Shown here piece after piece: positions 3,652 to 60,400 of a stretch of 64,000 nt of DNA (its first letter is position 1; the number at the start of each line of letters is the position of its first letter). The notes below the pieces were generated by a model. It saw only the letters and a list, made by a program, of their open reading frames with translations, was not told the DNA's origin and did not search any database. The position numbers and the translations under genes were made by a program. The stretch spans positions 1-64,000 of the forward strand of contig NW_021832564.1 of assembly GCF_006345805.1 (NCBI RefSeq), read 5' to 3'. Source of the DNA: Octopus sinensis (Eukaryota).

Positions 3652-4945
3652 CAGGGTGCAGCAAAATGATCGGACATATTTGTTGGTTTGATAAAAGTGA
3701 AATAGAGTAAAGAAGGGAAAATGTTTTTATTTTCGAAATGTAGATAATAACGCCATTTTGTTTCGTTTCGTGTCATTTGTGATGTTTTGTTTCAATTCGT
3801 TTTCAGTTGCCAACTTGAATTGGACGGACGAGCATCGCACTTTCATTGTGGAAACGTTTATCAAGAACAACGAATCCATAACCGCAACCCGAAGAGCGTT
3901 CCGTGTGCCCTTCAGGCTTGGTAAACATGACCCCGTACCGACTCGAAATTCTGCAGCAGCAGAATTCGGCATTGAGGTCTGTACTTCTTCGAAGAAAACA
4001 ATGTTACAGTGACTGTGAACTCTGATCGATATTGTGTAAAGCTAGAGACTATTCTGAACCCCAAATTGAATAAACTTGACGATAAAGACAATGTTTGGTT
4101 TCCACAGGAAGGGGCAACAGCCCACACTTCTCGATGTGCGATGGAGATTTTGAGGGAGATGTTCCCCGGTCATTTGATCCCATTGCGCAGTGACATCGGT
4201 TAGCCCACCCGATCACCTGATTTGAACCCGTGCGATTTTTTTCTGTGGAGATACCTGAAATCAGAAGTATACACTCATCGCCCTCGATCTATTGAACAAT
4301 TAAAAGATGCCATTCAAGAAATTGCTGCCATTCCACACGAAATGACCCGTCGTGTTATGGACAACTTTCGTGAACGCCTTCAACAGTCTGTGGACAATAA
4401 AAGCACCCACTTGACTAATTTAACTTTTAAAACCGAACGAAACAAAATGGCATAATATATAGATTTCGAAAATAAAAACACATTTTTGTTCTTTACTCTA
4501 TTTCGCTTTTCGGAGGCGCAATGGCCCAGTGGTTAGGGCAGCGGACTCGCGGTCATAGGATCGCGGTTTCGATTCCCAGACCGGGCGTTGTGAGTGTTTA
4601 TTGAGCGAAAACACCTAAAGCTCCACGAGGCTCCGGCAGGGGATGGTGGTGATCCCTGCTGTACTCTTTCACCACAACTTCCTCTCTTACTTCCTGTTTC
4701 TGTTGTACATGTATTTCAAAGGGCCGGCCTTGTCACTCTCTGTGTCAAGCTGAATATCCCCGAGAACTACGTTAAGGTTACACGTGTCTGTGGAGTGCTC
4801 AGCCACTTACACGTTAATTTTACGAGCAGGCTGTTCCGTTGATTCGGATCAACCGGAACCCTCGTCGTCGTAACCGACGGAGTGCTTCCATCCATTTCGC
4901 TTTTATCAAACCAACAAATATGTCCGATCATTTTGCCGCACCTTG
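3652..4945 (+). mobile_element. Internally deleted Tc1/mariner-superfamily DD41D (rosa-like) transposon with ~120-bp TIRs and TA TSD
   Basis: TA|CAGGGTG…CACCTTG|TA. Left TIR 3652-3770 matches right TIR 4434-4510 plus 4894-4945. Transposase relics WTDEHRTFIVETF, YFFEE..VTVNSDRY, QEGATAH…SPDLNPCDFFLW, with 41 aa between the 2nd and 3rd catalytic positions. Confidence 0.9.
4511..4893 (+). mobile_element. SINE family A (tRNA-Arg-like head), full length, inserted in the transposon TIR
   Basis: A-box TGGCCCAGTGG, B-box GGTTTCGATTCC; 11-bp TSD ATTTCGCTTTT at 4500-4510 and 4894-4904. Confidence 0.95.
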
Positions 4946-13614: not shown

Positions 13615-13850
13615 TCATCATTCATCATTGTTCGACCGTGGTCGAGACAATGGAATTTACCATGCTACGCCAGACTTCACGGTCCATCATGGCATTACGG
13701 AGGTCCTGTTGCTGGATGCCTGTATCCCTGGAGATTACATCAGGGTAGGAGAGTGTGCGCCCTCTGGTATTGCGAGTAGATGGCTTCCAGAGGAGAAGAG
13801 TAGAAATTACCTGTTTTTCAGCTCTACAACAATGTCCAGTAAGATCTAGC
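13615..13850 (-). mobile_element. RTE-clade LINE 3' end
   Basis: GHCCRAEKQVISTLLLWKPS..RGRTLSYPDVISRDTG..DLRNAMMDREVWR, followed by an (ATG)n tail; typical RTE C-terminus. Confidence 0.8.
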
Positions 13851-14381
13851 AAATATCCATGCAGATCTAGCAAATATCCCTGCCCGTGGCCTTCATCTAT
13901 CACTCGTCGTCTCTGGGATCAAGAGCTTCCTTCTAGTTCCACCATCACATCTACTGCATACTTTATCAATTTTAGTGGGTCCTAAGGTTCAGTTTTGCTC
14001 TCAACTCTCCATCAATGGCCAACTTGCCATCACCTTCATCATCGCCCTACTCCTATAGAGATGATAATACCTTTCCCTTTTACATTCCTTCCTAAAACCT
14101 TCCGGATCAAAACTTCGTCCCTATGTAACCAAGGCACTTCAAGCCAAAACTGTTCTTACTTCATAATAAAGAAAACTTGAAAGCACCTGTCCAACGGAGT
14201 ACTACCAAAAGCAGAAAGACAGACTCATTCATATATCGAGAAAACATAATCAGAGACCCTATTATCCAACTTGGATCTTTTGAAATCACAACAAATATTC
14301 ACCTTTCCTTCGAATCACTCTTGGCGATCCCGCATCTTCGACACAATAAAAACTGCATCAGAACAGTTTGTAATTCCTCCT

Positions 14382-22034: not shown

Positions 22035-22752
22035 TGGAAGCACTCCGTTGGTTACGACGACGACGGTTCCGGTTGATCCGAATCAACGGAACAGCCTGCT
22101 CGTGAAATTAATGTGTAAGTGGCTGAGCACTCCACAGACACGTGTACCCATAACGTAGTTCTCGAGGATATTCAGCGTGACACAGAGAGTGACAAGGCCG
22201 GCCCCTTGAAATACGGGTACAAGAAAAACAGGAAGTAAGAGTGAGAGAAAGTTGTGGTGAAAGAGTACAGCAGGGATCACCACCATCCCCTGCCGGAGCC
22301 TCGTGGAGCTGTTTTAGGTGTTTTCGCTCAATAAACACTCACAACGCCCGGTCTGGGAATCGAAACCGCGATCCTATGACCGCGAGTCCGCTGCCCTAAC
22401 CACTGGGCCATTGCGCCTCCACTGGTGAAAGAGTACAGCAGGGATCACCACCATCCCCTGCCGGAGCCTCGTGGAGCTTTAGGTGTTTTCGCTCAATAAA
22501 CACTCACAACGCCCGGTCTGGGAATCGAAACCACGATCCTACGACCGCGAGTCCGCTGCCCTAACCACTGGGCCATTGCGCCTCCACTGGTGAAAGAGTA
22601 CAGCAGGGATCACCACCATCCCCTGCCGGAGCCTCGTGGAGCTTTAGGTGTTTTCGCTCAATAAACACTCACAACGCCCGGTCTGGGAATCGAAACCGCG
22701 ATCTTATGACCGCGAGTCCGCTGCCCTAACCACTGGGCCATTGCGCCTCCAC
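22035..22752 (-). mobile_element. SINE family A with its 5' ~166 bp triplicated in tandem
   Basis: Units start at 22256, 22424 and 22589; each carries the full tRNA head. Confidence 0.95.
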
Positions 22753-22887: not shown

Positions 22888-23165
22888 CAAGGGCCGGTTG
22901 GAAAGTTCGTAGGCTGACCAAAATATTCTCATGGAATGTGACCCCCAAATCAAGTTTATTTTTCAACATAATGTCCCTTACAATCCACACAGTTCTTCCA
23001 TCGGTGTTGCAGTGCTTTGATCCCATCGTTGGAAGAAACTTGCAATCTCTTGGTTAAAAAAATCAGCAGCCGATAGGACGTCATCATCAGTGCGATACTG
23101 GTTCTCAGCCAAGTGTTTTTTTGTTGTTTTTTTTCATGTTTCGGAACAGATGACCGTCAGATGGG
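22888..23165 (-). mobile_element. Mariner 3' fragment with TIR
   Basis: TA|CAAGGGCCGGTTGGAAAGTTC end; translation resembles SDxHLFxNMKKxLAxxQYRTDDDV. Confidence 0.65.
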
Positions 23166-23579
23166 ACGAAATCAGGAGAATAGGGTCGGTTATCAACCAG
23201 TTGATCGTATTACAATATAGAACTGAAGAAATAAGGATAAATATGTTGGGGTTTCCGAACAAAAATGATATCAAGAAAGGGATCCCTAAAAAAGAGAGAG
23301 CAACTATATTGGGGAATTCAGGGCTCTCCAACATACATCCAAGGGTTATCATTACGCACGAAAGGTCAATACCTTCTAGTTCTTAACACCAACCTACAGC
23401 TGCAGAGCCCTTGCAGGCTCATTGAGTTAAATTCCACCAATCTCACCAATCAAACTCATAAATCCCACGAATCACAATCATCAATCACACCAACCACCCT
23501 CGTCAATCGCACCAATCACACCAATCACACTCATCAATTCCATCAATCACACTCATCTATCATAAAATTTACAGTGGTG

Positions 23580-23760: not shown

Positions 23761-24275
23761 TGCGTGTGTGTAGGGGGTGGGTTGTAATGCTAGTGTTACT
23801 TTGTTGTTGCTACTGTTGTTGTATGTTGTGCGCGTAGAACGTAGACGGGGTAGATCGGAGGGGGGCGGGGTCGAAGCGAATGAAGGAAGCGTGAAAATTA
23901 CTGGGCACAGAAATTACTGAGACGTGAATTAAATGCTACAAAATAAGGGCGGAGGTGGGGGGAACAAACAGAATACTTGGTGTGGAACGGGGTCTTGTTT
24001 AGCCCTTGGTCAACTGTGATCGAGCAGGCCTATGATGAAAGACATTCCAGCAATGACTATCCCACCTTTGATTCGATTTGCAGGGCATCCCACGACAACA
24101 CTATCCAGCGAGTTCATGTCTTTTAAACGATATCGGGGTGAGGCTTGTGGGTGGGGGTGGAGGGCGGATTTAGCCATTATTTCTAGCAGGTCAAGCAACC
24201 ATATAGGGACCCCTTCGTTGGCTCGCTGGTGATAGTGCTGATGGCGACAATGCTCCTGGTGACTTGTTGTTGTTG

Positions 24276-24322
<47 letters not shown>

Positions 24323-25049
24323 GGTGCTGGTGGTGCTGGTGGTGGTGGTGGTGGTGGTGGTGGTGGTGGTGGTGGTGGTGGTGGCGTTAGAGCTGTCACC
24401 TACTTGAAGGCCCTAATGATTTTGACCACTCAAATAACAACGAATTACAAGCTCAGGCTAATTAGTTTATTTAATTATTCATTTTTAAAACCATTATATA
24501 AAGAAAGAAAGAAAAAAACTGACTAGAAACAAGGAAAACTTCAGCAACGCATCGCATGACAAACTGATCGAGTGTATGTTAAAGTAACAATTTCATTGGT
24601 TATTAAACGTTCGACGTCACACATGCGGTAGAAATTGGCGAATAGCGATGTTTGAGTATGGCGTAAAGAGCTGAATGGTTCTATGTCTTGTGTGTGTTGT
24701 TTCGTATGTGTATGTTTGTCTGCGTATGGGTATCTGTCCGTATATGTATGTTTCTGTGTATGCGTTTGTGTATTTGACCGTAAGAGCTAACAACCACATA
24801 AATAATATGATCTATGAATGAAAATAGATGAGAGCGGAGGCCCATGGACGTATTTGTGCGTATGATTATCGTACATACGTATGAGTGTGTGCGCGTGTGT
24901 GTGTGTGTGTGTGTGTGTGTGAGTGTGTTTGGTGTAATCAGGGTATTATTGTATTTGTGTGTGATATATATATATATATATATATATACGTACAATATAT
25001 ATATATGCATGCATATATATACATTCACACACAAGCATATATACACGTA

Positions 25050-25365
25050 TATATATATATGTGTGTGTGTGTGCATGTATGTATGTACGTTTGTATGTAT
25101 GTATGCATGCATGCAAGCATGTATGTATGTATGTATGTATGATGTATGTATGCATGCATGCATGTATGCATGCATGCATGCATGTATGTATGTATGTATG
25201 TATGTATGTATGTATGTATGTATGTATGTATGTATGTATGTATACATGCATGTATGCATGCATGCATGTATGTATGTATGTATGTATGTATGTATGTATG
25301 TATGTATGTATGAATGTATGTATGTATGTATGTATGTATGTATGTATGTATGTATGTATGCATGT
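25050..25365. repeat. (TATG)/(CATG) tract
   Basis: Read directly. Confidence 0.95.
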
Positions 25366-25414
25366 ATGAGCAAATGCATTTATACGCGAGTAGTTTTATC
25401 TTAACAGGATTTAA

Positions 25415-25522: not shown

Positions 25523-25626
25523 TCATGCATCATTAGATTTAGATTCTCTATAAATGGAACGGACAATGTATAGCGATTTATCGTTTCGGGTGTTTAACAC
25601 TGCTGTGTAATCAATCGTTGCTGTAC
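25523..25626 (-). CDS. Speculative terminal exon of the 25.5-27.1 kb gene model ([34 protein letters not shown])
   Basis: Acceptor CTCTAATACAG; phase 1 compatible with exon 26389-26464; no independent support. Confidence 0.25.
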
Positions 25627-25684
25627 CTGTATTAGAGCGGTGCATATAACTACGTATACACACACATATATGTATATACATATA

Positions 25685-25766
<82 letters not shown>

Positions 25767-26388
25767 TATATACATGACTTGTATATACGATGGCTGAGGT
25801 AACAATTGATCCATGTCAACCATAATTCACTGCAAACTTGTATGTATGTGCGTAAACACAGACAGACAGACAGATAGAACGAGAGAGAAGTAGATACGTA
25901 AATGTATTTATATATTTGAATATATCTGTACTGTATTGATGTGTGTATGTTCATATATGAGTGCGTGCGCGTGCGTATGTTTTAATATATTACGCCTACC
26001 AGCATTTATGCACGTATCCAATATCCATCCATCATCTTTAATTACTGCCACCCGTTAATAAGGACATGCACACAAACACACAAGCACATATATCTATCTA
26101 TATATATATTGATGTATATATGAATGTGTGCATGTGGTTGCTTGTTTTCTGGGTATGTATTGTGTAATTATCGCTGTGTGTTAATTTACGGGTGGTAGCA
26201 ATTAAATGTAAATGTACGTTTGCAGAAATTAGTGTGAATACAGTGTAGGCGTTTAGAATGTATTCATGTGTATGTGTGTGTGCGTGTGTGTGCGTGTGTT
26301 TGTGTGTGTGTGCAGTGAGACACACACACACACACTCACGCATGCCTACACTGCTGATCAAAAGTCTGAACTCGCTGTTAAAGTTCAC

Positions 26389-26464
26389 CTTTCACACTGC
26401 AGTTTGTGAACAATAATGAAGGGGTGTATTTTCTAATAAAATATGCAAATGAATTGAGACCAGA
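26389..26464 (-). CDS. Speculative exon 3 (SGLNSFAYFIRKYTPSLLFTNCSVK)
   Basis: Acceptor TGTTTGTTCAGCTGTAG, donor AAG|GTGAAC, open frame, phase 0 to 1. Confidence 0.25.
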
Positions 26465-26710
26465 CTACAGCTGAACAAACAACAGCATCAGGCAGACGAC
26501 CCATTTGTCTCGTCTTCGCCCGCAATCTGGTTGGGCCGGTTTCCTACCAAATTTTGGCGGTAACCTTGCGCTATTTCCTGTGGTCTAACCTGGGCACATC
26601 TTCCTTATTAAGTCCGAAATCGATTAACAATTATATATAAACTGCAGTTTCTGTTATCATATGATCATATGATACAGGGTCTATATCAGGAAATGAACCT
26701 GTTCGCTTAC

Positions 26711-26752
26711 TCGACAGAGAAATATCAATTTTTCATGGCAGGCTGCAACTTT
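26711..26752 (-). CDS. Exon 2 of unknown spliced gene (KVAACHEKLIFLCR)
   Basis: Acceptor GTTGTTTCCAACAG with upstream CTTAAT branch-like site; donor CGA|GTAAGC; 42 nt, phase 0-0, in frame with exon 1. Confidence 0.6.
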
Positions 26753-26847
26753 CTGTTGGAAACAACGCTATTAAGGATGACCGTTTAAATAACTTCTTCA
26801 GAATATTCGGCAGTTTATGATTGAATATTGAGGTATTTTCCACTCAC

Positions 26848-27147
26848 CAACTCTTCGTTTGTGTGACTTCTTCTCACCGCCATCATAAAGAGTGAGCATT
26901 GCTCCAGGATTTGGGGGATTGCTTCAGGAATTTGATGGTCGTTACACGAAATGAAAAATTGATGTAAATTCTTTTTAAAAAATGACATTAGACCTGTTCT
27001 ATTTTGGTCAATTTCTTCAATCCCTGCAAAATTACAAACAAACCTCGTAAATAATCTTGGATCTTTAATTTTCCTTAATAATCTTGGGTCTTTTATTTTT
27101 CTCAATAACCTTGGGTCTGTTCTTGCAGCTTTTGCCATTGACATCAT
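26848..27147 (-). CDS. Exon 1 of unknown spliced gene, 100 codons (MMSMAKAARTDPRLLRKIKDPRLLRKIKDPRLFTRF…RRSHTNEEL)
   Basis: ATG with in-frame upstream stop; donor TTG|GTGAGT at a codon boundary; internal 27-bp repeats differ only at synonymous positions. Confidence 0.7.
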
Positions 27148-27665
27148 ACCGTTTCATTTTAACTGTATGTTTAATAACGTACGTAACGCGGAAACACAGC
27201 CACTCACAGACACAGACACACTCATACACTCACAGACAGATATACACTCATATACAAAATGTGACGTTGTCGTCGTCATGGTACAAAATGTTCCTGACAT
27301 ACACTCACATACATGTACTAAGATAGCCACACAGAGACATACATTTACGCATGTCAGTCGTTACATATGTATATGCATGTGTAAATGTGTGGGTGTTTAA
27401 TAATGTAGCTAACGCGGAAAGAGACACACAGACATTATGAGACATATACATACTCATACACTTACACACATACACTCACAGATATATACATAATCATATA
27501 CAAAATGTGACGTCGTTGTCGTCGTGGTATAATATACCCTGTTGACAACAGATGGAGTATCTCAGAGAAATGTTATATTGTTTTAATCGAAATGAAACGA
27601 AATGAAAATAGTCGAAATGAAAATAAAATTTCGTGTTGACACTGACCAGGCCTCACATACATATA

Positions 27666-27894
27666 TGTTTCTTTACTACCCACAAGGGGCTAAACATAGA
27701 GGGGACAAACAAGGACAGACAAACGGATTAAGTCGATTACATCGGCCCCAGTACGTAACTGGTACTTAATTTATCGACCCCGAAAGGATGAAAGGCAAAG
27801 TCGACCTCGGCGGAATTTGAACTTAGAACGTAGCGAGGGACGAAATACCGCGAAGCACTTCGCCCGGCGTGCTAACGTCTCTGCCAGCTCGCCG
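27666..27894 (-). mobile_element. SINE family B inserted in the tandem repeat
   Basis: ~15-bp TSD CCTCACATACATATA (27651-27665, 27895-27909). Confidence 0.9.
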
Positions 27895-28439
27895 CCTCAC
27901 ATACATATAGTATGTTTAATAACGTACTTAACGCGGAATGGCACAAGTACTGTGCGACATATACACACGCATACACTCACACACATACATTCACAGATAG
28001 ATACCCAGTCAGTCGTCAGTCGTCACATATGTATGTGTATGTATAAATGTGCATGTGTTTCATAACGTACTGTTACATATGTACATGTATGTGTAGATGT
28101 TTGTGTATGTTTAATAACGTACCCAACGCAGAATGACACACACACTATGAGACATATACACACTAGTACACTTACACACCGTCGTCAGTCGTCACATATG
28201 TATATGTATGTGTAGATGTGTGTGTGTTTGATAACGTACCGTTACATATGAACACGTATGTATGATTTGTGTGTTTAATAATGTACCTAACGTTCAAAGA
28301 CACACACTATGAGACATATACACACTCATACACTTACACACGTACACTGATGACAGATACACAGTCATATACAAAATGTGATGTCGTTGTCGTCGTGGTA
28401 TAAAATGTCCTGTTGACAATAGAAAAATTATCTCTATGA

Positions 28440-29376
28440 GATATTGTCGGTTTGGATGCCAGCATCAATTCTGTTCGAATTGATTTTGATATTCAGTGCA
28501 ATGATACACTTTTATAGGCTAATTAATGACGTGAAATTAATTGTCGCTATTAATCAATAAATAAAGAGTTATTAGTAATTTAAGTTTGAAAATTTTGGTA
28601 ATTTTAACCAATTGTAAGCCACAGATACATTTATGCCTGTTTCGATTGTAAGAAGCGGAACATGAGAACTCTTTTGTCTGCGTGCCTGTTACCATAGTAA
28701 CAGTCTTTGAAAAGTCTTTTATCTGCGAGGAAGCACGTGTTGACAAATTTGACGCTGTGTTCTGTGTTCTGTATGATTATGGCAACAAGCTCCATTAACT
28801 TCACTTCTATTATGGAAACATTGAAAACAGAGAAGGACACTGTGTCGCACCTTCAAGAAAAGGGTGTTACACCCAAAAGGAAACTATGTAAAAAGAGGCA
28901 TGTTATGTGTACGAAAAGACTGGCGATCGCATGTAACGTGTTGTTTATCGCATTTGCATTAAATGTATATTGAATGCTTAAATTTTTATTTACTCGCTTC
29001 TTTTTGTCACTGAGGTGGTTGTGAGATGTGCTAAAAATAACAGTTAAATAAGATTTTTTGGATAAATCTTTTAAATTAACGTAAACATTTATTTACATGA
29101 AAGAAAATTACCGAAGATATAACACGTGTTGTTTTCAAATATTGACAACACATGCTATTTTCAAGGTGTTGACGAAAATGACAGCTTCCAAATTCTGTTT
29201 CCTGACTAAGTGAAAATGATCAAACTTTATACCTCTATAACTTATTAAAAACATTTTTGTGGAAAAAATTAAATAATTCCAGCAATTCAGTTTGGGCACG
29301 TGTATTATTGAAAAAAAATTTTAATTTTCGGTAAACTTTAATTTTTGAAATTCTGGCAGCCAAACCGATAATATTC
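28440..29376 (+). mobile_element. Non-autonomous DNA transposon, probably Merlin (IS1595/ISXO2-like)
   Basis: ~23-bp TIR GATATTGTCGGTTTGGATGCCAG / CTGGCAGCCAAACCGATAATATTC; 9-bp TSD TCTCTATGA; ORF relic INFTSIMETLKTEKDTVSHLQEKGVTPKRKLCKKRHVM resembles Merlin transposase N-termini (from memory). Confidence 0.6.
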
Positions 29377-30039
29377 TCTCTATGAAATGTTATATTGTTT
29401 TAATCGAAATGAAAATAAAATTTCGTATTGACACAGACCTGACCTCACATACATATAGTATGTTTAATAATGTACCTAACGCGAAACGACACACACTGTG
29501 AAACTCACACACATACATCCACAGACAGATACACAGTCATATACAAAATGTGATGTCGTTGTTGTCGTGGTATAAAATGTCCTGTTGACAATAGAAAGAT
29601 TATCTCTATGAGATCAAAACGCCCCCCGTCCAATGGACGATGCTAGTTGTCAAACATTTAAAGCAAATTTTCTCAAAGCAACTTGTCCGACCGTCCCATA
29701 GGCCTCCCCTTTGAGAAACACTGATTTAACCTAAATTTGAGACACCAGCAAAAGAAGAAATAAAGATAGACTTTTTTTCAATTCCAAAAAAAAAAACGAT
29801 TTTATTCGCACAAATATGCAACTGAAGAGTTTAAAGTACCAGTAATGATAAGGCTGTTGACTGGGAGAACACAAACATGGTTTAAACAGTAAGCTTGGCA
29901 GGAAAGAAACGTGCCTTTAAGCAGTACAAAAATAACAAAAAATGGAAGGTGCAGTTATGTACAGGTTGACGGAAGACAAGCAGGACAAAAACGGCTTTAT
30001 CGATCACATTCTCACCTGGAATAAATTTTGGTAGTTTTT

Positions 30040-37670: not shown

Positions 37671-37809
37671 ATGTAAAAGCCGGACTAGACTACTTTATGC
37701 GCAACTCCATTGTCTCCCGAGACAAAAAGGATGCCAACAATTACTGCAGTTAGTCAAAATTCATGCTTGTGTAATATATTAAAACAAAAGCAGGGGCTGA
37801 ACAATTACA

Positions 37810-38370
37810 TCGTTTTTTTATATAGTCTCCTTGTTTTTACGATGCATTTCTTCCAGGGGTCCACAAGCCCTTTACGCAGCCGTTTACGCACCACTTTCTG
37901 CACTTCCTCGTCTTTACCAAACCGACGACCTTCGTAAATGATTTTGGAGCTGAGAGCTGATAGTCGGGAGTAGGCGAGATCTGGATTGTGTGCAGAGAGT
38001 TCCAGCAACTGAAAACCTAATTTTTCAATGGTTTCAATAGTGTGGGCAGCCATATGTGGACGTGAACTGCCGTGCAACAATAAAACTTGCTTTGACAATG
38101 GCCCTCTGTATTTGGTGTGAATTGCTGGTTTCAGTTTGTTGACCAGCATTTCCCTGTAGCCTACACCGGTGAGAGTAGAACCCTTTTTAAAAAGTAATGT
38201 TCCATTACAGGCTCTTTTGGGTCCCAAAAAACTGTTGACATCAATTTTTTTCTGTAGAAAGTTGCGTTTTGAATTTCTTTTTCGTTAGCGATTCCATGTA
38301 TTTTCACTCCATACTTTGCCTTTTGAATAAGTACAAGACTTCTTAAAAAACAAATAAGGCTGCAGTCCGA
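37810..38370 (-). pseudogene. Degraded mariner transposase (DDD domain)
   Basis: KKLMSTVFWD; KLKPAI..KYRGPLSKQVLLLH…PH.AAHT.ETIEKLGF; NPDLA; GRRF.KDEEVQKVV. Confidence 0.85.
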
Positions 38371-42059: not shown

Positions 42060-42470
42060 CATAAGCTACGGTACTCAGGACCTCTCGTTAAGGCTAGCAG
42101 CTTTTCTAGTTGTATTCATATATGATGCTGGTGCTCAATTTTCTATCTTTAATCCCTATACATATTTCAAAAGTCCTGTGGTGCTCTCCAGGTGCCAATG
42201 AAGGAACGAATTGTCATGCTGATAGAAACGACTTTTGAAAGACTGCTCTGTGAGTTCTACTTGGCATGTTGGCAGATTGAAGATAGTAGGGTACACAATG
42301 TCTTTACATGTCGGCTCCTTTTCCGCGTAATGTGTTGGCAATATTTTTGCTTCGTGACTCATAATCATACTCTCTGTATTCTGCATGCAGTTATAGTGCG
42401 CCTCCATGTTGTTCTTGTAAAACAAATGGCAGAGTTTGTAACTGATCAAAAGTAGAAACATTATTTTTTC
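42060..42470 (-). mobile_element. Penelope-like element, GIY-YIG endonuclease region relic
   Basis: DIVY….ELTEQSFKSRFYQHDNSF….STTGLLKY resembles the YxGxTExxFKxRyxxHxxSF…TxLSKY motif. Confidence 0.7.
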
Positions 42471-42535
42471 ATCAGTGTTATAACAGAATGTATCATCTAG
42501 TCACAAATTCTTTCTGCTTTCGGCTCCCTTTATAG

Positions 42536-59699: not shown

Positions 59700-60400
59700 A
59701 ATTCCATTTGGCTCCAGAGATTTACAATGGGGCAGTTGCAGGGTGGAAGAAACCCCGCGGCATGGGAAAGACTTCCTCCTACCCCCCCTCTCCATTTACT
59801 TGCAAATTATTTGGGGGGGCCAAAAACGCACGTTTTCGGGTACGGAGATTTCGGAAAATTGCCAAAAATCGGTATTTTGAAATTTCTGGTCCCACTTCCC
59901 ACCCTTACCCCCCACCGAATTTCTTCGTTTTTCATTTTTTCCGTAACCCTAACCGTAACCCCAAAACACCAACCCTAACCCTAAAACCCTAACTCTAACC
60001 ATAACCCTAACTAGAAAAGTTTGGGGAAATTTTTTCGGCATATTTTGAAAAAAAACAAAAGAATTTCTGAAAAAATTTTAAAATGAAGAATGTAGGGGAT
60101 GGGGGAATTATAATTTCAAAATGGTGATTTTTACCAATTTTTTTGCAGATTCGTATTTTCCGTAGCCGTAAGTTGTGTAGAAAAAAAAGGGGGGTGTTTC
60201 TTGTGGGGAGGACAAAAGGAAGTCTTTGCCGCGGCATACTCCGCACAAAATGGCTGGACGTGATTAAGGAAAATCTCCAGAGACTCGACGTTATCTTGGA
60301 GGATGCAAAGGGTCTGGCACGGGGTCCGCCAGCGATGGGGGTGGACCTGTTCGGCTCCACGCACAATGATACAGTTGGGACCGCTAACCAGGGATGACCC
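59700..60400 (+). mobile_element. RTE-like LINE 3' fragment split by a MITE
   Basis: With the MITE removed it reads AGWKKPRGILRTKWLDVIKENLQRLDVILEDAKGLAR. Confidence 0.7.
59764..60228. mobile_element. Mutator-like fold-back MITE with a central telomere-like (CCCTAA)n tract
   Basis: Ends GGGAAAGACTTCCT / AGGAAGTCTTTG; TSD CCGCGGCAT (7-9 bp); imperfect subterminal inverted repeats; TAACCC repeats 59944-60011. Confidence 0.75.

What the first reader, a model, noticed from the sequence alone, without database searches (positions are those of the whole stretch)
25523..27162. Unannotated spliced gene whose N-terminal repeats differ only synonymously
Seen on the minus strand: ATG at 27147 with an in-frame upstream stop; 100 codons to TTG|GTGAGT; a 95-nt intron with CTTAAT and TTGTTTCCAACAG; then a 42-nt in-frame exon (26752-26711) ending CGA|GTAAGC. 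The repeats are GAC CCA AGG TTA TTG AGA AAA ATA AAA / GAC CCA AGA TTA TTA AGG AAA ATT AAA / GAT CCA AGA TTA. All five differences are third-position and silent (DPRLLRKIK), a signature of purifying selection on this frame. A phase-consistent extension (26464-26389, 25626-25523) gives a 173-aa protein but is speculative; an alternative 42-nt exon lies at 26589-26548. I recognise no family. Inference: a lineage-specific gene, or a gene fragment carried by the adjacent Helitron-like repeat.
Basis: partly seen in the sequence, partly recalled or inferred. Interest (0 to 1): 0.8.

Follow-up and report, generated by a model that had tools for sequence, protein, structure and literature searches.

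The report
Candidate orphan spliced gene, unverified
A 100-codon open reading frame with a short intron and a peptide repeat whose copies differ only by silent changes probably marks the start of a small protein-coding gene with no known relatives. Nothing outside this one sequence could be found to confirm it.

Summary
ORF length proves nothing: the window holds 85 open frames of at least 112 codons. Two other features beat chance. First, all five differences between the 27-nt repeat copies are silent third-position changes (P about 2e-4 to 4e-3). This is the only complex tandem array of 26 in the window with that property. Second, this is the only one of 114 comparable ORFs with a consensus donor near its end, a short intron, an acceptor, an in-phase exon and a second donor. 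Amino-acid composition, helical amphipathicity and AlphaFold confidence (64.5 against 47.2 for a control ORF) lean the same way. Against: no period-3 signal, flat GC by codon position, an out-of-frame ATG 10 nt upstream, a 5' flank made of repeat units, and no homologue in Pfam, two very large protein libraries, PDB or BFVD. A control search suggests these libraries hold few animal proteins, so missing orthologues count for little. The 173-aa extension and the Helitron link are unsupported. My verdict is a probable 5' end of a lineage-restricted gene (about 0.5). The rivals are a relic or transposon-borne fragment (0.2) and chance (0.25). Interest is modest.

The parts
26848..27147 (-). Putative exon 1. 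It runs from the ATG through 100 codons to TTG|GTGAGT and encodes MMSMAKAART-(DPRLLRKIK)x2-DPRL followed by a predicted helical region.
   Evidence: Single copy in the window. AlphaFold gives an all-helix model with pLDDT 64.5 and pTM 0.58.
27050..27118 (-). 27-nt tandem repeat x2.6 inside exon 1. The five differences between copies are all third-position and silent.
   Evidence: TRF. Probability 2e-4 to 4e-3. It is the only complex array of 26 in the window with this property.
26753..26847 (-). Putative 95-nt intron, GTGAGT ... CCTTAAT ... TTGTTTCCAACAG.
   Evidence: GTRAGT occurs at 0.66 per kb per strand in the window.
26711..26752 (-). Putative 42-nt phase-0 exon 2 (KVAACHEKLIFLCR), followed by the donor GTAAGC.
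   Evidence: The full donor-intron-acceptor-exon-donor chain is found in only 1 of 114 comparable ORFs.
27155..27157 (-). Out-of-frame upstream ATG, 10 nt before the main ATG. It opens a 30-codon ORF that ends at the TAA at 27067-27065. It overlaps the in-frame TGA at 27156-27154.
   Evidence: Read directly. It is the same frame as the 54-aa ORF 27065-27229.
27165..29606 (.). Cluster of about 130-270-nt repeat units with core GTATGTTTAATAACGTACCTAACGCGGAA...CAAAATGTGACGTCGTTGTCGTCGTGG. The nearest unit ends 18 nt upstream of the ATG, so any promoter or 5'UTR would lie in repeat DNA.
   Evidence: Self-BLAST, alignment, and repeat families D9-D12, D16 and D17.
26548..26589 (-). It lies in a 38-codon open segment with protein-like composition. 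Its status is unknown.
26267..26360 (.). (TG)n/(CA)n palindromic microsatellite that bounds the unique 0.8-kb segment on its 3' side.

Best explanation
The minus strand at 27147-26711 is the 5' end of a real, lineage-restricted (orphan) protein-coding gene. Exon 1 (100 codons) would be spliced across a 95-nt intron to a 42-nt micro-exon, then on to at least one further exon that I could not identify. The product would start with a short basic region: two and a half Asp-Pro-capped DPRLLRKIK units, predicted as short basic amphipathic helices. A four-helix bundle-like region follows. Shown here: the sequence features and their rarity in this window. Inferred: that the locus is transcribed and spliced as drawn, that the peptide repeat is held by selection, and that the basic repeats act as a binding or localisation module (nucleic acid, membrane or nuclear import). 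The biochemical function is unknown.
For: Silent differences: all five differences between repeat copies fall on codon position 3 and are silent, with P = 2e-4 to 4e-3 depending on transition bias and P(all at position 3) = 0.002. No other complex tandem array among the 26 tested shows this.
Splice architecture: the target is the only one of 114 high-complexity ORFs of at least 80 codons with a GTRAGT donor near its end, a short intron, a pyrimidine-AG acceptor, an open in-phase exon and a second donor. With loosened rules only 4-8 of 114 pass.
Protein-likeness: amino-acid composition ranks 18 of 228 open frames, close to a bona fide mariner fragment at rank 15. Mean helical hydrophobic moment ranks 8 of 114, and rank 1 is a real transposase fragment. 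Single-sequence AlphaFold gives pLDDT 64.5 and pTM 0.58, against 47.2 and 0.40 for a length-matched control ORF from the same window.
Intactness: the frame is unbroken over 114 codons in a window that is 47% repeated within itself, and the segment itself is unique there.
Against: ORF length carries no weight: 85 open frames of at least 112 codons exist here. There is no period-3 signal (SNR 1.27, 26th percentile from the top; 0.46 without the repeats). GC1/2/3 is flat at 0.38/0.35/0.33. An out-of-frame ATG in good context sits 10 nt upstream, and the 5' flank is repeat DNA. No AATAAA or ATTAAA lies between 26710 and 26043. No homologue was found in Pfam, 5.8 billion protein clusters, exhaustive phmmer against 1.84 billion representatives (the three hits are unrelated DPxL low-complexity repeats), PDB or BFVD folds, or JGI metagenome and IMG/VR contigs. 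No downstream exon could be identified. The antisense frame shares 4 of the 5 silent changes. The splice-chain criteria were set after seeing the target. The AlphaFold comparison rests on one control.
Confidence: 0.5

Rival explanations
1. Chance. This is an ordinary open frame in AT-rich, repeat-rich non-coding DNA that happens to contain a slipped 27-nt duplication and consensus-like splice motifs.
For: Open frames this long are common here: 85 observed, about 24 expected. There is no codon periodicity and codon-position GC is flat. No homologue was found. An upstream out-of-frame ATG is present. If the strict splice chain has a per-ORF chance of about 1%, one such ORF per window is expected. 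After allowing for roughly 30 array-by-frame tests in the window, the silent pattern is only marginal (about 0.02-0.06).
Against: The silent pattern and the splice chain fall in the same ORF. That ORF is also in the top 7-8% for protein-like composition and amphipathicity and folds better than the control. The joint chance probability is of the order 1e-4 to 1e-3.
Confidence: 0.25
2. Relic of coding sequence. This would be a fragment of a host gene or of a transposon-encoded gene, possibly moved by the adjacent repeat element. It was once under selection but is no longer a functional gene here.
For: The silent-only differences record past selection and do not require present function. The segment is wedged between a repeat cluster and a microsatellite. 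No terminal exon or poly(A) signal was found. The window is full of decayed transposon ORFs. Transposon proteins are often masked before annotation, which could explain the missing database hits.
Against: The 114 codons and three splice sites are intact. There is no second copy and there are no terminal inverted repeats around the segment. Other copies of the flanking repeat unit do not continue into ORF-like sequence. No parent gene or transposon protein matched. Pfam found no transposase or HTH domain.
Confidence: 0.2
3. The selected frame is on the plus strand. The antisense frame 26963-27397 is open for 145 codons and reads the repeat as NNLGSLIFL.
For: Four of the five repeat differences are silent in that frame as well, and it is longer than the minus-strand ORF.
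Against: One difference is non-silent (L/F). There is no ATG, GTG or TTG in that frame before the repeat; the first start is at 27167. The frame runs straight into the repeat units, whose other copies carry similar ORFs. The peptide is hydrophobic and low in complexity. Long antisense open frames are a known by-product of coding sequence.
Confidence: 0.03

Closest known systems
Taxonomically restricted (orphan) protein-coding genes of animal genomes
   Same: A short multi-exon ORF with no detectable homologue or domain, a predicted simple helical fold and a repeat-rich neighbourhood.
   Different: Membership normally rests on transcription, translation or conservation within the clade. None of these could be examined here.
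Gene fragments captured and carried by Helitrons or other transposons
   Same: The segment lies directly beside a cluster of interspersed/tandem repeat units. It contains exon-intron structure, as captured genomic fragments do.
   Different: Only one copy is seen. No Helitron termini were identified, no parent gene was found, and the frame and splice sites are intact.
Short tandem peptide repeats maintained by selection in coding exons (silent-site divergence between repeat units)
   Same: Identical peptide units encoded by diverged codons, with 4 of 9 third positions differing between units 1 and 2.
   Different: There are only 2.6 units and five differences, so the statistical power is small.

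Membership tests
Protein-coding exon (generic criteria) | Open frame longer than expected by chance | tested here: not met
   85 open frames of at least 112 codons in the window. A Markov model expects about 24.
Protein-coding exon (generic criteria) | Excess of silent over replacement differences | tested here: met
   5 of 5 repeat differences are silent, P = 2e-4 to 4e-3. Unique among 26 arrays. The antisense frame gives 4 of 5.
Protein-coding exon (generic criteria) | Three-base periodicity or codon-position composition bias | tested here: not met
   Period-3 SNR is 1.27, and 26% of non-repeated 300-nt windows score as high or higher. GC1/2/3 is 0.38/0.35/0.33. Power is low for 300 nt.
Protein-coding exon (generic criteria) | Canonical, phase-consistent splice sites | tested here: met
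   GTGAGT / CCAACAG / GTAAGC in phase. The chain is found in 1 of 114 control ORFs.
Protein-coding exon (generic criteria) | Homologues or orthologues with a conserved frame | tested here: inconclusive
   None found. A control transposase fragment from the window hit only anonymous ORFs on ENA long-read assemblies and no named animal protein. Coverage of the relevant genomes is therefore doubtful.
Protein-coding exon (generic criteria) | Transcription, splicing and translation | not testable with these tools
   No RNA-seq, Iso-Seq, Ribo-seq or proteome data are available here.
Helitron-carried gene fragment | Helitron termini (5' TC, 3' hairpin plus CTRR) bounding the fragment | not tested
   No repeat library is available. 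No terminal inverted repeats and no conserved hairpin were seen at the boundaries of the unique segment. A proper Helitron scan was not possible.
Helitron-carried gene fragment | Fragment present in several copies together with the element | tested here: not met
   Within the window, 26361-27164 is unique, while the flanking unit has at least 5 further copies that do not continue into it. Genome-wide copy number is not testable here.
Any curated protein family (Pfam-A) | Significant profile match | tested here: not met
   0 families at E up to 10.
Mariner/Tc1 transposase (remnants lie nearby on the same strand) | HTH or DDE transposase domains | tested here: not met
   No Pfam match. The mariner remnant at 22981-23209(-) is 3.5 kb away, beyond microsatellites.

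The most novel reading that the evidence does not exclude
This is an old clade-restricted gene that annotation has missed. Four of nine third positions differ between repeat units 1 and 2, a Jukes-Cantor distance of about 0.67. If the window comes from an octopus and the transposon clock of PMC13282606 applies (JC 0.09 for about 25 My), that is of the order of 100 My. The Asp-Pro-capped basic nonapeptide repeats would be a new binding or localisation module. The 13-bp perfect duplex joining exon 1 to exon 2 would act in micro-exon splicing or as an RNA-editing substrate.
Probability: 0.07. Interest if true: 0.55.

Novelty: new member of a known kind. Interest (0 to 1): 0.25.

Why it matters
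If real, this is one more lineage-restricted gene in a repeat-dense genome, found from sequence alone through silent-site divergence between peptide repeats. That signature could be scanned for systematically to recover unannotated genes. By itself it changes little: orphan genes are numerous in such genomes, and no function can be assigned.

Tried and rejected
- Pfam scan of the ORF gave nothing.
- Word-indexed search of 5.8 billion protein clusters gave nothing.
- Exhaustive phmmer of exon 1 against 1.84 billion representatives gave only three unrelated DPxL or DPRL low-complexity repeat proteins, matching residues 10-33.
- Exact look-ups of the ORF and of two other window ORFs in public assemblies found none on record.
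- Foldseek of the AlphaFold model against PDB and BFVD gave best E about 1.
- Back-translated pattern scans of JGI metagenome contigs and IMG/VR gave nothing.
- Rfam on the whole window gave nothing.
- A decayed mariner ORF at 37805-38227(-), used as a database control, gave no hits because of the word prefilter, so that control failed.
- Ranking downstream minus-strand open segments by composition instead found only mariner and LINE remnants.
- A search for terminal inverted repeats around the unique segment found none.
- A poly(A) and TATA search was uninformative.
- Loci from ENA assembly ERZ25067582 share only the transposon with the window (82% nt identity), so the source organism could not be tied to it.

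Full report
**Observation**

- The ATG is at 27147. An in-frame TGA lies three codons upstream, at 27156-27154.
- Exactly 100 codons run to GAG TTG|GTGAGT.
- The 95-nt intron (26847-26753) contains CCTTAAT and ends TTGTTTCCAACAG.
- A 42-nt phase-0 exon (26752-26711, KVAACHEKLIFLCR) follows, then GTAAGC.
- Unspliced, the ORF is 26815-27147 and 110 aa.
- TRF finds a 27-nt unit x2.6 at 27050-27118. The copies encode DPRLLRKIK, DPRLLRKIK and DPRL. They differ at five nucleotides, all at codon position 3 and all silent.
The alternative exon 26589-26548 is also in phase.

**Is it more than chance?**

ORF length is not. The window holds 85 open frames of at least 112 codons, 35 of them of high complexity. 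A second-order Markov model of the window gives about 24.

The silent pattern is. Given four differences in 27 nt and one in 14 nt, the probability that all are silent is 2e-4 at ts/tv weight 1, rising to 4e-3 at weight 8. The probability that all fall on position 3 is 0.002. I tested all 26 indel-free tandem arrays in the window whose period is a multiple of three, in every open frame. This is the only complex array with several differences that are all silent. The one other case is a CAT/CAC histidine microsatellite. Allowing for about 30 comparable tests, the window-wide significance is marginal, roughly 0.02-0.06.

One caveat concerns the strand. The antisense frame that shares the wobble position (plus strand, 26963-27397) is open for 145 codons and has 4 of 5 differences silent. 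It has no start codon before the repeat, runs into the flanking repeat units and reads as hydrophobic low-complexity peptide. I therefore keep the minus strand.

The splice architecture is also unusual. Among 114 high-complexity open frames of at least 80 codons, only the target has all of the following: GTRAGT within its last 60-120 nt, a 50-1000-nt intron, a pyrimidine-AG acceptor, an open in-phase exon, and a second GTRAG donor. With loose rules 4 to 8 of 114 pass. I chose these rules after seeing the target, and a per-ORF chance near 1% would give about one such ORF per window. This feature matters only because it falls in the same ORF as the silent pattern.

Weaker indicators point the same way.
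- Amino-acid composition (log-likelihood against translated background) ranks 18 of 228. That is next to a genuine mariner fragment at rank 15.
- Mean helical hydrophobic moment ranks 8 of 114. A genuine transposase fragment is first.
- Single-sequence AlphaFold gives an all-helix model with pLDDT 64.5 and pTM 0.58. A length-matched control ORF at 42159-42500(-) gives 47.2 and 0.40. This is a single control.

Indicators against or neutral:
- There is no period-3 signal. The SNR is 1.27, and 26% of unique windows score as high or higher. Without the repeats it is 0.46.
- GC1/2/3 is flat at 0.38/0.35/0.33.
- An out-of-frame ATG at 27157, in good context, opens a 30-codon ORF across the main start.
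- There is no AATAAA or ATTAAA between 26710 and 26043.

**Context**

Forty-seven per cent of the window has a paralogue within the window. It carries mariner, Tc1/maT-like and LINE remnants.

The ORF sits in a unique 0.8-kb segment, 26361-27164. A (TG)n/(CA)n microsatellite bounds it on the 3' side. On the 5' side lies a cluster of 130-270-nt repeat units (27165-29606), whose nearest copy ends 18 nt before the ATG. Other copies of that unit do not continue into ORF-like sequence. No terminal inverted repeats bound the segment. I could not classify the unit as a Helitron or anything else.

**Relatives**

None were found.
- Pfam gave 0 families at E up to 10.
- The 5.8-billion-cluster search gave nothing.
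- Exhaustive phmmer against 1.84 billion representatives gave three weak hits, E = 2e-5 to 6e-4. They are unrelated proteins with DPAL, DPLL or DPRL low-complexity repeats and match only residues 10-33.
- Foldseek against PDB and BFVD gave best E about 1.
- JGI metagenome and IMG/VR scans gave nothing.

How much this absence means is limited. A well-preserved transposase fragment from the window (4204-4452, plus strand) hit only anonymous short ORFs called on long contigs of ENA assemblies ERZ25067582, ERZ22157276, ERZ25067590 and ERZ25067576, plus a few JGI and Logan contigs. It hit no named animal protein. These libraries therefore seem to hold little annotated animal sequence, and the source organism itself was not identified by any tool.

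**Downstream exons**

I found none. Minus-strand open segments downstream that are unique and of normal complexity total only 4,221 residues. The most protein-like are a mariner C-terminus (22981-23209) and a LINE tail (13628-13918). Donor-like motifs occur at 1.5 per kb per strand and acceptor-like motifs at 5.7 per kb per strand, so a phase-consistent chain can almost always be drawn. The 173-aa model is therefore not evidence.

**Interpretation**

The silent-only repeat divergence, the intact splice chain and the protein-like properties all fall in one unique segment. That makes a coding origin more likely than chance.
- I put about 0.5 on a currently functional, lineage-restricted spliced gene whose later exons are unknown.
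- About 0.2 goes to a relic or transposon-borne fragment.
- About 0.25 goes to chance.
- About 0.03 goes to the antisense frame.

The predicted product begins with Asp-Pro-capped basic amphipathic units followed by four longer helices. A binding or localisation role for the basic repeats is inference only.

If the window comes from an octopus, a rough date is possible. Four of nine third positions differ between units 1 and 2, a Jukes-Cantor distance of about 0.67. The transposon clock in PMC13282606 equates JC 0.09 with about 25 My. Together these would put the duplication near 100 My, with very wide error. Orthologues should then exist in related species, which is a clear test.

**Novelty and interest**

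At best this is a new member of a known kind, an orphan gene. Interest is modest (0.25) until transcripts or orthologues are shown.

Noticed in passing
window 26951-26963 and 26724-26736: A perfect 13-nt inverted repeat (ATCAATTTTTCAT / ATGAAAAATTGAT on the minus strand) pairs exon 1 with exon 2 and encloses both splice sites of the 95-nt intron in the minimum-free-energy fold. Only about 1% of first-order Markov simulations of the 861-nt region contain such a repeat.
   Followed up: partly
window 26963-27397 (+): The antisense frame is open for 145 codons across the repeat and into the flanking repeat units. Four of the five repeat differences are silent in it. It has no start codon before 27167.
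   Followed up: yes
window 27165-29606: A cluster of at least 6 copies of a 130-170-nt unit plus a roughly 100-nt companion piece (27560-27665 matches 29377-29457 at 88-91%). In the two longer copies the pieces are in swapped order, as in a broken tandem array. Unclassified.
   Followed up: partly
window 4204-4452 (+): A C-terminal fragment of a Tc1/maT-like transposase (SPDLNPCDFFLW...). Relatives at 65-82% aa identity lie on contigs up to 1.2 Mb in ENA assemblies ERZ25067582, ERZ22157276, ERZ25067590 and ERZ25067576. Some sit next to DUF4817 ORFs.
   Followed up: partly
window 37808-38284 (-) and 22981-23209 (-): Two decayed mariner-type transposase remnants (…LLLHGSSRPHMAAHTIE…NPDLAYS… and …PYSPDFVPSDGHLF…).
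   Followed up: no
window 13628-13918 (-) and 60128-60394 (+): Open segments that look like C-terminal tails of LINE/RTE-type ORF2 (…DREVWRSMVNSI…; …TKWLDVIKENLQRLDV…).
   Followed up: no
window 22255-22752: A 165-nt tandem array x3.0 at 97% identity. It appears to be made from a SINE-like sequence that also occurs dispersed through the window.
   Followed up: no
window 24010-24399 (-): An open frame dominated by (CCA/CCG)n and (ACA)n, giving runs of proline and threonine. Together with the (TATG)80 array at 25050-25368 and (AT)53 at 25666-25772, it shows how microsatellite-dense the region downstream of the ORF is.
   Followed up: no
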